This document shows positions 53,195 through 54,076 of a DNA stretch of 64,000 bases, piece by piece. The position numbers were made by a program, and so were the translations under genes. The stretch lies in contig NC_043008.1 in assembly GCF_006345805.1 (NCBI RefSeq), positions 67,332,001-67,396,000 on the forward strand. The letters are read 5' to 3'. The notes beneath the pieces were generated by a model. That model had not been told where the DNA came from. It saw only the letters and a program-made list of their open reading frames with translations, and searched no databases. The stretch comes from Octopus sinensis (Eukaryota). The stretch's first letter is position 1. Every line of letters starts with the position of its first letter.

Positions 53195-54076
53195 TTAATG
53201 TTCACGAGATCGAGCAAATTGTGTGCTGCCAACTGTCTTGCTCCTCCGACGTTCATAATATTCAGGTGGTGGTCGGAAAAAGGGGTTCATATCACGGTTA
53301 TTGCTGTTACGACCAGGGCGAGAAGACAATAGTGAATGTGAGGATGACAATGATGGGAGTCGGCGCTTACTGTCAGACATCGATGATAATGAAGATGATG
53401 CAGACCGTCTCTCACTGGCTCTAGGATATGGTTGGTGTCGGAAACGACTTGCAGCCATAGATGGTGGTGGGTAGTTGTTGGAATAAGGACTCTGTTTCTT
53501 ACTGTTGTAGTTATCGTTGTTGCTGTGGTTCTGGCGCCGGTTTTGGTCACCATCAGCATTCTTTCCAAGCCAATCCTGAGCGGGATTTGTTTGAGAGTAG
53601 TTATTCCCAAGAGATTCCTTGTAACTGTTCTCTCGATATCTACTTAGAAATGAGTAAAGACCATCAATACTTCCATTCATAGCATTAATTTCTTTAGAAA
53701 TATTACTTAAAGTGGTGCACGTTTTTTCATGTAAATCTCCACTTCTGAAATCTCGAGCACGAACTGAAGGGCAATCCCTACATAAGTGCCCAGTTTTACC
53801 ACATCGAATGCATTCACCACGGTTGCCCATTCCAGGTTTGGCGTGTACTTTACTGTGGGACGGTTGTACCTTGAGGATTGAGCCATTCCAGTCTTTATTG
53901 TTTAGATTTTCAACAGCTTTCATAGCATCTGTGCTTTCAGTAAAGTGGACGAATCCAAAGTCTTTGATAATGTCACATTCAACGACTTCACCATAATTGG
54001 CGAAGAGGTCCCATACTGATTTCTCACTGCTGCCCTTGGGCAAGTTGCCAACATATAATTTTGTGGTGCGTGGCAT
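53195..54076 (-). CDS. Lark/RBM4-like RNA-binding protein with one RRM, a CCHC zinc knuckle and a S/N/R-rich tail; intronless, 293 aa
   Basis: RNP2 KLYVGNL and RNP1 KDFGFVHF, followed by KPGMG and C-x2-C-x4-H-x4-C (CIRCGKTGHLCRDC). This is collinear with the RRM2-plus-knuckle half of Lark/RBM4. RFRHQPY resembles a PY-NLS. The ORF is uninterrupted. Confidence 0.9.
   Translation of the reverse strand: MPRTTKLYVGNLPKGSSEKSVWDLFANYGEVVECDIIKDFGFVHFTESTDAMKAVENLNNKDWNGSILKVQPSHSKVHAKPGMGNRGECIRCGKTGHLCRDCPSVRARDFRSGDLHEKTCTTLSNISKEINAMNGSIDGLYSFLSRYRENSYKESLGNNYSQTNPAQDWLGKNADGDQNRRQNHSNNDNYNSKKQSPYSNNYPPPSMAASRFRHQPYPRASERRSASSSLSSMSDSKRRLPSLSSSHSLLSSRPGRNSNNRDMNPFFRPPPEYYERRRSKTVGSTQFARSREH

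What the first reader, a model, noticed from the sequence alone, without database searches (positions are those of the whole stretch)
53195..54076. Intact single-RRM Lark/RBM4 paralogue
Seen: the ORF begins MPRTTKLYVGNL, has one RRM followed by KPGMG and a CCHC knuckle, and has an in-frame TGA two codons before the ATG with no AG in between, so RRM1 cannot be spliced on in frame. Known: Lark/RBM4 proteins have RRM1-RRM2-knuckle. Inference: a lineage-specific truncated paralogue that stays open for 293 codons in heavily decayed surroundings, so it is probably under selection and may have altered RNA specificity.
Basis: partly seen in the sequence, partly recalled or inferred. Interest (0 to 1): 0.72.

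Follow-up and report, generated by a model that had tools for sequence, protein, structure and literature searches.

The report
Octopus lark-like RNA-binding protein gene
This is the intact, already annotated octopus gene for a Lark/RBM4-type RNA-binding protein; its one-RRM layout is the normal one in molluscs rather than a truncation, so it is an ordinary gene whose only unusual trait is that cephalopods have lost all of its introns.

Summary
The sequence observation holds in every detail. There is a 293-codon ORF on the minus strand (53195-54076). It encodes one RRM, KPGMG and a CCHC knuckle, and a TGA lies two codons before the ATG.

The gene is functional. Intact orthologues exist in O. 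vulgaris, O. bimaculoides, a third octopod and Argonauta. dN/dS is 0.24 over the RRM and knuckle. There are no frameshifting indels where about 13 are expected from the flanks.

It is not a lineage-specific truncation of a two-RRM Lark. One RRM plus a knuckle is the usual layout of "lark-like" proteins in bivalves, gastropods, a cuttlefish, a brachiopod, a nemertean and chelicerates. No other lark-family protein of Octopus turned up in three database searches. The one octopod two-RRM relative, in Argonauta, has a first RRM that looks like a secondary copy of the cephalopod RRM.

The protein is already in NCBI as "RNA-binding protein lark(-like)".

Side results:
- The coding sequence is intronless in octopods and cuttlefish. 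A brachiopod, a scallop, an abalone and a limpet share at least six introns, so a retrogene-like origin is likely.
- An otherwise invariant Trp in the knuckle is Leu in this clade.

Interest is low.

The parts
53195..54076 (-). Complete single-exon coding sequence (293 codons plus TAA) of the octopus lark-like RNA-binding protein
   Evidence: ORF list and sequence. An identical protein is on record in NCBI/UniRef (P0121). O. vulgaris CAI9731207.1 differs by one residue, and O. bimaculoides XP_014775244.1 by 20 of 293.
53849..54070 (-). RRM domain (residues 3-76), with RNP2 LYVGNL and RNP1 KDFGFVHF intact
   Evidence: Pfam RRM_1 E 1.1e-15. Best PDB matches are RBM4B RRM1 2dnq (62 bits) and RBM30 RRM2 2dgt (55 bits). 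AlphaFold2 gives a beta-alpha-beta-beta-alpha-beta fold with pLDDT about 90.
53825..53836 (-). PGMG linker motif (residues 81-84) between the RRM and the knuckle
   Evidence: Invariant in alignment A1. Present in 50 of 53 one-RRM and 87 of 87 two-RRM relatives.
53771..53812 (-). CCHC zinc knuckle CIRCGKTGHLCRDC (residues 89-102), with Leu98 where relatives have Trp
   Evidence: Weak zf-CCHC match; all four ligands are invariant. Leu occurs only in the octopod one-RRM clade and P0092; 134 of 140 relatives have Trp.
53612..53764 (-). Octopod-specific segment after the knuckle (residues 105-155, ...GDLHEKTCTTLSNISKEINAMNGSIDGLYSF...), predicted as two helices at low confidence
   Evidence: Shared by both Argonauta paralogues and all Octopus sequences, and absent from bivalve, gastropod and cuttlefish proteins. 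Helices 115-132 and 137-155 have pLDDT about 50.
53405..53446 (-). Conserved tail motif RFRHQPYPRASERR (residues 211-224; R-x-R-..-P-Y ... R-R)
   Evidence: R213, P216, Y217, R223 and R224 are invariant across nine mollusc sequences.
53243..53275 (-). Conserved tail motif RPPPEYYERRR (residues 268-278), which contains a PPxY-type sequence
   Evidence: RPPPEYY..R is invariant in alignment A1. The PP[PE][ED]Y pattern occurs in 33 of 53 one-RRM relatives and 2 of 87 two-RRM relatives.
54080..54082 (-). In-frame TGA two codons upstream of the start codon
   Evidence: Sequence. Conserved in O. vulgaris, the L003 species and Argonauta L001.
52977..53194 (-). Probable 3' UTR. It is better conserved between octopods than the coding sequence and contains an A13 run (T-run at 53037-53049 on the + strand).
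   Evidence: 92.5% identity with few gaps against L003, compared with 83% in the 5' flank. No direct transcript evidence.

Best explanation
The ORF is the functional octopus member, and apparently the only annotated one, of a widespread 'lark-like' branch of the Lark/RBM4 family. In that branch the normal architecture is one RRM, a PGMG linker, one CCHC zinc knuckle and a disordered tail carrying two short conserved motifs. It most likely acts as Lark/RBM4 proteins do. The RRM and knuckle would bind RNA. The low-complexity tail would mediate localisation and partner binding, so the protein would regulate splicing or translation of target mRNAs. This function is inferred from homology and is not shown here. 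Shown here: the gene is intact and selectively constrained across octopods. The one-RRM layout is ancestral for the group and not a truncation. The coding sequence is a single exon in coleoid cephalopods, whereas a brachiopod and three other molluscs share at least six coding introns. Inferred: the intronless state arose once, by retroposition of a spliced mRNA in an ancestor of cuttlefish and octopods. The copy then duplicated, giving the window/P0004 lineage and the Argonauta P0003 lineage, and P0003 later gained a second RRM by internal duplication.
For: Identity: the identical protein is in NCBI. O. vulgaris and O. bimaculoides entries are named RNA-binding protein lark(-like).

Orthology: Argonauta P0004 begins MPRTTKLYVGNLP, ends in the same tail, and lies next to the same PPTA-repeat gene.

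Constraint:
- Window versus L003: dS 0.165. Omega is 0.24 for codons 1-105 (Fisher p 0.001), 0.88 for the tail and 0.59 overall.
- One 3-nt indel in the CDS against 42 indels (33 frameshifting) in 2150 nt of flank. Expected in the CDS 13.5, P about 1e-6.
- Window versus O. vulgaris: 7 differences in the CDS, 6 of them synonymous, while the flanks differ by about 3%.
- Window versus Argonauta: dS is saturated, yet dN is 0.10 over the RRM and knuckle.

Layout: 53 of 144 collected relatives have one RRM plus a knuckle, including all named bivalves, most gastropods, Lingula, Tubulanus and chelicerates.

Fold: the RRM is predicted at pLDDT about 90. RNP1, RNP2 and the zinc ligands are intact.

Introns: exon maps of Lingula L015, scallop L007, abalone L008 and Patella L009 share positions, including an 8-codon microexon inside the knuckle. 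The window, O. vulgaris L006, L003, Argonauta L001 and L002, and cuttlefish L016 are each one uninterrupted ORF.

Domain tree: the octopod one-RRM clade has 76% bootstrap support. With Argonauta P0003 RRM2 added the support is 90%.
Against: There are no expression data, so transcription is inferred only from database annotation and from a conserved 3' flank. The tail evolves almost neutrally at the substitution level (omega 0.88), although its reading frame is kept. I could not search an octopus genome directly, so an unannotated canonical two-RRM lark gene or a P0003 orthologue is not excluded. Retroposition is inferred from complete intron loss only. The A13 run 145 nt after the stop is not a convincing poly(A) remnant, target-site duplications are not recoverable at this age, and I did not test whether the locus differs from the ancestral one. 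Deep nodes of the 73-column RRM tree are weakly supported. Inclusion of P0003 RRM1 in the octopod clade has only 34% support, so whether one or two RRMs is ancestral for the whole family stays open.
Confidence: 0.85

Rival explanations
1. One reading: a lineage-specific paralogue of a two-RRM Lark/RBM4 gene that lost RRM1, for example as a 5'-truncated copy, and is kept under selection with new RNA specificity.
For: Canonical Lark/RBM4 of insects and vertebrates has two RRMs: 87 of 144 relatives here. PMC3602429 states that all RBM4 homologues except those of nematodes have two RRMs and a knuckle. Argonauta has a two-RRM paralogue, P0003, on the same chromosome. The octopod RRM scores slightly better against an RRM2 profile than an RRM1 profile (89 versus 79 bits). 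The knuckle Trp-to-Leu change is clade-specific.
Against: One-RRM relatives are the rule in molluscs, and they also occur in the cuttlefish, a brachiopod, a nemertean and chelicerates. Three searches found no two-RRM protein from Octopus. P0003 RRM1 is 55% identical to octopod RRMs, against 34-37% to canonical RRM1, and it shares the octopod-only ...NWNG..LKVQPS ending. The paper sampled only vertebrates, insects and nematodes.
Confidence: 0.07
2. A processed pseudogene or chance ORF that is still open but no longer functional.
For: The ORF is intronless. The surroundings are rich in repeats: SINE copies, microsatellites and a broken LINE 3 kb away. Tail omega is 0.88.
Against: The frame is kept open in five octopod genomes despite saturated dS to Argonauta. 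There are no frameshifting indels where 13.5 are expected. Omega is 0.24 over the RRM and knuckle. Against O. vulgaris, 6 of 7 differences are synonymous. The chance of such an ORF in the window is about 5e-5.
Confidence: 0.02
3. The ORF is the last coding exon of a larger gene, and an upstream exon supplies RRM1 through an acceptor site inside the ORF.
For: The canonical family has RRM1 upstream. NCBI calls the product 'isoform X1', so more than one transcript model exists.
Against: An in-frame TGA two codons upstream is conserved in four octopods. The first AG after the ATG lies beyond the RNP2 strand, so such splicing would break the RRM. There is no RRM-like sequence in the 10 kb upstream, nor in the 20 kb upstream of the cuttlefish gene. 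Independent annotations of three Octopus species and of Argonauta all start at the same Met.
Confidence: 0.03

Closest known systems
One-RRM 'RNA-binding protein lark-like' proteins of other lophotrochozoans and chelicerates (e.g. Mizuhopecten yessoensis P0007, Haliotis rufescens P0009, Lingula anatina P0095, Parasteatoda P0108, Acanthosepion pharaonis P0006)
   Same: The architecture is the same: one RRM, K/RPGMG, a CCHC knuckle, and a disordered tail with R-Y-R-P-Y...RR and RPPPEYY motifs. Identity over the RRM and knuckle is 48-56%.
   Different: The octopod protein has a roughly 50-residue insert after the knuckle, Leu instead of the invariant Trp in the knuckle, and an S/N-rich rather than P/Y/R/D-rich tail. 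Its gene has no coding introns, whereas non-cephalopod genes have at least six.
Drosophila Lark and vertebrate RBM4/RBM4B/RBM4.1 (the canonical family)
   Same: These give the best solved-structure matches (RBM4B RRM1 2dnq, RBM30 RRM2 2dgt). They share the PGMG + CCHC module directly after an RRM and a low-complexity C-terminal half.
   Different: The canonical proteins have two RRMs and this one has one. Its RRM is only 37-43% identical to either canonical RRM. The tails are unrelated: Ala-rich in mammals and RS-containing in insects, according to PMC3602429.
Argonauta hians GAB1606131.1 (P0003), the two-RRM octopod paralogue
   Same: It is also intronless. It has the same octopod-specific insert and the same C-terminal RPPPEYYERRR. 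Its RRM2 groups with the octopod one-RRM clade at 90% bootstrap.
   Different: It has an extra N-terminal RRM that looks like a secondary copy: 60.6% nucleotide identity in register with its own RRM2 and 55% amino-acid identity to octopod RRMs. It keeps Trp in the knuckle. Its neighbouring genes differ. No Octopus orthologue was found.
Retrogene replacement, as described for amphioxus SYCP1 (PMC5803294, abstract seen)
   Same: A single-exon copy is the only family member detected in a lineage whose relatives carry a multi-exon gene with conserved intron positions.
   Different: Here neither loss of the parent nor the change of locus has been demonstrated, and the event would be much older than any recognisable poly(A) tail or target-site duplication.
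Other RRM + CCHC-knuckle proteins (SRSF7/9G8, ZCRB1); recalled from general knowledge, not fetched
   Same: They have one RRM followed by one CCHC knuckle.
   Different: Neither name appears among the 60 listed matches of the solved-structure search, which RBM4B, RBM30 and RBM14 lead at the single-domain level. They lack the PGMG linker and the ECDI(I/V)K-x-(F/Y)GFVH signature seen here. The resemblance is in layout only.

Membership tests
Canonical Lark/RBM4 (as defined in PMC3602429) | Two N-terminal RRMs | tested here: not met
   One RRM only. There is no second RRM in the ORF or elsewhere in the 64-kb window.
Canonical Lark/RBM4 (as defined in PMC3602429) | CCHC zinc knuckle directly after the last RRM, joined by the PGMG linker | tested here: met
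   KPGMG lies at residues 80-84 and C-x2-C-x4-H-x4-C at 89-102. The Pfam zf-CCHC score is below the cut-off.
Canonical Lark/RBM4 (as defined in PMC3602429) | RRM sequence closest to RBM4-type RRMs among characterised proteins | tested here: met
   The best single-domain PDB matches are RBM4B, RBM30 and RBM14.
Canonical Lark/RBM4 (as defined in PMC3602429) | Function in splicing or translation control, and circadian output | not testable with these tools
   No expression, binding or genetic data are available here.
One-RRM lark-like subfamily (molluscs, brachiopod, nemertean, chelicerates) | Single RRM + PGMG + one CCHC knuckle, with the protein starting just before the RRM | tested here: met
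   The layout is identical to 52 other collected proteins.
One-RRM lark-like subfamily (molluscs, brachiopod, nemertean, chelicerates) | Tail motifs R-x-R-(x)-P-Y...(E/D)RR and RPPPEYY-x-RR | tested here: met
   Both are invariant in alignment A1. The PPxEY pattern occurs in 33 of 53 one-RRM and 2 of 87 two-RRM relatives.
One-RRM lark-like subfamily (molluscs, brachiopod, nemertean, chelicerates) | Trp immediately after the knuckle histidine | tested here: not met
   This clade has Leu98, whereas 47 of 53 one-RRM and 87 of 87 two-RRM relatives have Trp.
Functional retrogene | Uninterrupted coding sequence where homologues have introns at conserved positions | tested here: met
   The window, L006, L003, L001, L002 and L016 are single ORFs. 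Lingula, scallop, abalone and Patella share at least six introns.
Functional retrogene | Poly(A) remnant and target-site duplications | tested here: inconclusive
   An A13 run lies 145 nt after the stop and is partly conserved in L003. It sits inside a conserved 3' flank and has no clear upstream signal. Duplications were not sought, given saturated divergence.
Functional retrogene | Locus differs from that of the multi-exon parent, or the parent is still present elsewhere | not tested
   No cephalopod genome could be searched, and the flanks of non-cephalopod loci were too short for synteny.
Processed pseudogene | Frameshifts, stops or neutral substitution pattern | tested here: not met
   No disruptions in five octopod genomes. 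Omega is 0.24 in the domains. Indel test P about 1e-6.

The most novel reading that the evidence does not exclude
Coleoid cephalopods replaced the ancestral multi-exon lark-like gene with an intronless retrocopy before cuttlefish and octopods split. That copy then duplicated. In the Argonauta lineage one duplicate re-created a two-RRM + knuckle layout by internal RRM duplication, convergently with canonical Lark/RBM4. The other duplicate, the window gene, fixed a Trp-to-Leu change at the one knuckle position that is otherwise invariant across the family. More broadly, a one-RRM lark-like form is the standard in Lophotrochozoa and Chelicerata, contrary to the published statement that all non-nematode RBM4 homologues have two RRMs.
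Probability: 0.5. Interest if true: 0.35.

Novelty: already known. Interest (0 to 1): 0.15.

Why it matters
As posed, it matters little. The ORF is an annotated housekeeping-type RNA-binding protein gene with the domain layout normal for its phylum.

The useful outcome is corrective. A missing RRM1 in a mollusc lark gene should not be read as truncation, and the literature rule "two RRMs except in nematodes" rests on narrow sampling.

Three side results could interest people who work on RNA-binding-protein evolution or cephalopod genomics:
- complete intron loss across coleoids;
- a secondary two-RRM paralogue in Argonauta;
- a clade-specific loss of the knuckle's aromatic residue.

None of these opens a long-standing question.

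Tried and rejected
1. I looked for an RRM1 exon or any other lark-like piece in the window with tblastn, using nine relatives. Nothing was found outside 53195-54076.

2. I tried to classify the single RRM as RRM1 or RRM2 with profiles trained on 76 two-RRM proteins. The differences were small (89 versus 79 bits for the window, and near zero for spiders), so this classification is not informative.

3. The neighbour-joining tree of RRM domains resolves the octopod clade but not the deep branches. I do not use it to decide whether one or two RRMs is ancestral for the whole family.

4. I looked for retrocopy hallmarks after the stop codon. There is only an A13 run inside a conserved flank, which is inconclusive.

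5. tblastn appeared to show an intronless second copy inside the scallop and Patella loci. These were extensions of exact exon hits through low-complexity sequence, and the stricter exon map removed them.

6. The literature searches found no paper on octopus lark or on cephalopod lark retrogenes.

7. A look-up of the spider gene structure (P0108) returned nothing.

8. I considered SRSF7 and ZCRB1 as alternative RRM + knuckle families and rejected them on the PDB ranking and the linker motif.

9. The 180-aa ORF at 28086-28628 has no Pfam match.

Full report
OBSERVATION. The window carries an ATG-to-TAA ORF of 293 codons at 53195..54076 on the minus strand. It begins MPRTTKLYVGNLPKGS. Pfam RRM_1 matches residues 7-66 (E 1.1e-15), and zf-CCHC matches residues 88-104 weakly. 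KPGMG lies at residues 80-84, and CIRCGKTGHLCRDC lies at residues 89-102 with all four zinc ligands. At 35% GC, the chance of a 293-codon open frame anywhere in the window is about 5e-5. The other long ORFs are microsatellite artefacts or LINE fragments. tblastn with nine relatives finds no other RRM-like sequence in the 64 kb.

WHAT IT IS. A protein identical to the ORF product is already in NCBI/UniRef, on a 79.8-Mb contig.
- The O. vulgaris entry CAI9731207.1, named 'RNA-binding protein lark-like isoform X1', differs by one residue.
- O. bimaculoides XP_014775244.1, named 'RNA-binding protein lark', is 293 aa with 20 differences.
- The window DNA is about 97% identical to O. vulgaris OX597825.1 around 58.2 Mb. 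It therefore comes from a very close relative or another individual. O. sinensis is my guess and was not tested.
- A further octopod, known only from Logan contigs L003-L005, has a 292-aa orthologue at 80% identity. Its DNA is collinear with window 52345-55376.
- Argonauta hians P0004 (356 aa) starts with the same MPRTTKLYVGNLP and ends with the same FFRPPPEYYE.RR tail. It sits next to a PPTA-repeat gene whose exons are also in the window at 5213-8968, so it is the orthologue.

IS IT UNDER SELECTION? Yes.
- Against the L003 species, dS is 0.165. dN/dS is 0.24 for the RRM and knuckle (codons 1-105; 12 synonymous and 12 non-synonymous changes; Fisher p 0.001), 0.88 for the tail and 0.59 overall.
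- The coding sequence has one indel, of 3 nt. The 2150 aligned flank bases have 42 indels, 33 of them frameshifting. That predicts 13.5 frameshifts in 882 nt, so P(0) is about 1e-6. By the same rate the tail alone should have about 9.
- Against O. vulgaris the CDS has 7 differences, 6 of them synonymous, while the flanks differ by about 3%.
- Against Argonauta, synonymous sites are saturated, but dN is only 0.10 over the RRM and knuckle.
- The first 220 nt or so after the stop are 92.5% conserved, more than the CDS itself, which suggests a functional 3' UTR.
- AlphaFold2 predicts a canonical beta-alpha-beta-beta-alpha-beta RRM at pLDDT about 90. Residues 115-155 form two low-confidence helices and the rest is disordered.

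IS IT A TRUNCATED, LINEAGE-SPECIFIC PARALOGUE? No. Three database searches collected 144 relatives. A domain census gives 53 proteins with one RRM plus a knuckle and 87 with two RRMs plus a knuckle.
- The two-RRM set consists of fishes, amphibians and insects, plus Patella P0005 and Argonauta P0003.
- The named one-RRM proteins come from:
  - bivalves: Mizuhopecten, Solemya, Mya, Mactra, Dreissena and Ruditapes;
  - gastropods: Haliotis, Pomacea and Candidula;
  - the cuttlefish Acanthosepion pharaonis: P0006 maps at 100% identity to L016 30778-31791;
  - other groups: Lingula, the nemertean Tubulanus, spiders, a scorpion and mites.
- These one-RRM proteins share with the octopus ORF the PGMG linker and two tail motifs, R-x-R-..-P-Y...RR and RPPPEYY.RR.

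No search returned any other lark-family protein from the three annotated Octopus species, even with the cuttlefish protein as query. The window gene thus looks like the Octopus representative of the family and not an extra copy.

The published statement that all RBM4 homologues except those of nematodes have two RRMs rests on vertebrates, insects and nematodes only (PMC3602429).

THE ARGONAUTA TWO-RRM RELATIVE. P0003 (342 aa) lies 1.3 Mb from P0004 on the same chromosome. It shares the octopod-specific segment after the knuckle.
- Its RRM2 joins the octopod one-RRM clade with 90% bootstrap support.
- Its RRM1 is 55% identical to octopod RRMs and 50% identical to its own RRM2. It is only 34-37% identical to canonical RRM1. 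It also carries the octopod-only ending NWNG..LKVQPS.
- The two RRM units are 60.6% identical at the nucleotide level, in register.

The simplest reading is that the second RRM of P0003 is an old internal duplication, not an ancestral RRM1 that the window gene lost. Support for this is moderate. Placement of RRM1 inside the octopod clade has 34% bootstrap support.

GENE STRUCTURE. The coding sequence is a single exon in the window, O. vulgaris (L006), the L003 species, both Argonauta paralogues (L001, L002) and the cuttlefish (L016). In the cuttlefish a 1.4-kb Logan contig is collinear with the genome at 99.9% identity. P0092, from an ENA metagenome contig, is another intronless one-RRM cephalopod-like copy. 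It has the Leu-type knuckle, and its model is over-extended because TGA was read as Trp.

By contrast the genes of Lingula, scallop, abalone and Patella span 6.4-15 kb. They share intron positions, including one after the RNP1 strand and an 8-codon microexon that encodes the end of the knuckle. Loss of at least six conserved introns at once is the classic signature of an mRNA-derived copy. I infer one retroposition before the cuttlefish-octopod split, followed by DNA-level duplication.

No poly(A) tail or target-site duplication can be recognised. The parent, or its loss, was not demonstrated.

MECHANISM. By homology, the protein should bind RNA through the RRM and the knuckle. RNP2 (LYVGNL) and RNP1 (KDFGFVHF) are intact. 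It should act in post-transcriptional regulation as Lark/RBM4 does. This is inference and nothing here tests it.

One concrete lineage-specific change bears on specificity. The residue after the knuckle histidine is Trp in 134 of 140 relatives. It is Leu only in the octopod one-RRM clade and P0092. In retroviral-type CCHC knuckles the aromatic residue at this position stacks on a base (general knowledge), so the knuckle's contribution to binding may be weakened or changed.

The tail motif PPPEY fits a PPxY WW-domain ligand, and RFRHQPY fits the R-x(2-5)-P-Y part of a PY-type nuclear localisation signal. Both assignments are pattern matches from general knowledge and are untested.

VERDICT. The sequence observation is correct and the gene is real and constrained. 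It is also an already annotated gene with the domain layout normal for its phylum, so the proposed novelty (a truncated, lineage-specific paralogue) is not supported. Interest is low (0.15). The residual novelty lies in three side results:
- the coleoid-wide intronless state;
- the secondary two-RRM paralogue in Argonauta;
- the Trp-to-Leu knuckle change.

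Noticed in passing
window 57037-59487 (+): Remnant of a non-LTR retrotransposon. A 434-aa ORF has an endonuclease domain (Exo_endo_phos_2) and a separate 330-aa ORF has a reverse transcriptase (RVT_1). They are split by about 150 nt, so the element is broken. It lies 3 kb upstream of the lark-like gene.
   Followed up: partly
window 13432-13544, 17113-17225, 22052-22140, 29066-29162, 33268-33353, 34203-34313, 35547-35639, 36349-36446, 43871-43980, 47739-47823, 48980-49059, 56871-56978, 59518-59560: A SINE-like repeat of about 90-110 nt is present in at least 13 copies. 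Copies in the Argonauta loci (L001 3664-3757; L002 5851-5963 and 8766-8878) are 80-92% identical, so the family is old and shared across octopods.
   Followed up: no
window 5213-5605, 6355-6660, 8868-8968 (+): Exons of a protein-prenyltransferase-alpha-repeat (PPTA) gene. The same gene neighbours the Argonauta orthologue (L001 1-1852). There the two genes are 8 kb apart on the same strand. Here they are 44 kb apart and convergent, which implies a local inversion or rearrangement.
   Followed up: partly
window 9784-12891, 40895-41434 and 56120-56737: Long TA/CA-type microsatellite blocks generate spurious ORFs of 130-260 aa rich in Y, I, C and V on both strands.
   Followed up: no
L007, L008, L009, L015 (scallop, abalone, Patella, Lingula): A conserved 24-nt microexon encodes the last Cys of the CCHC knuckle (for example SKDCPRGP in Haliotis). 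The octopod Trp-to-Leu change sits exactly at the position of the intron that precedes it.
   Followed up: partly
L009 9111-9284 (-), Patella vulgata: An inverted extra copy (83% aa identity) of the first half-exon of RRM2 lies inside the Patella lark gene. This hints that RRM exon duplication is ongoing in that lineage and may explain its two-RRM isoform.
   Followed up: no
L016 10001-31794 (Acanthosepion pharaonis) and L014 5001-6431 (ENA contig): Two public gene models are wrong. P0126 is a chimeric 21.8-kb model in which only the last 95 residues or so are lark-like, although an intact 338-aa single-exon ORF lies at 30778-31791. P0092 runs past its real stop (about residue 418) because TGA was translated as Trp.
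   Followed up: yes
window 28086-28628 (-): A 180-aa ORF with no Pfam match. From memory, part of it (…RHVSAKFVPKLL…QK…) resembles mariner-type transposase remnants, but this was not confirmed.
   Followed up: partly
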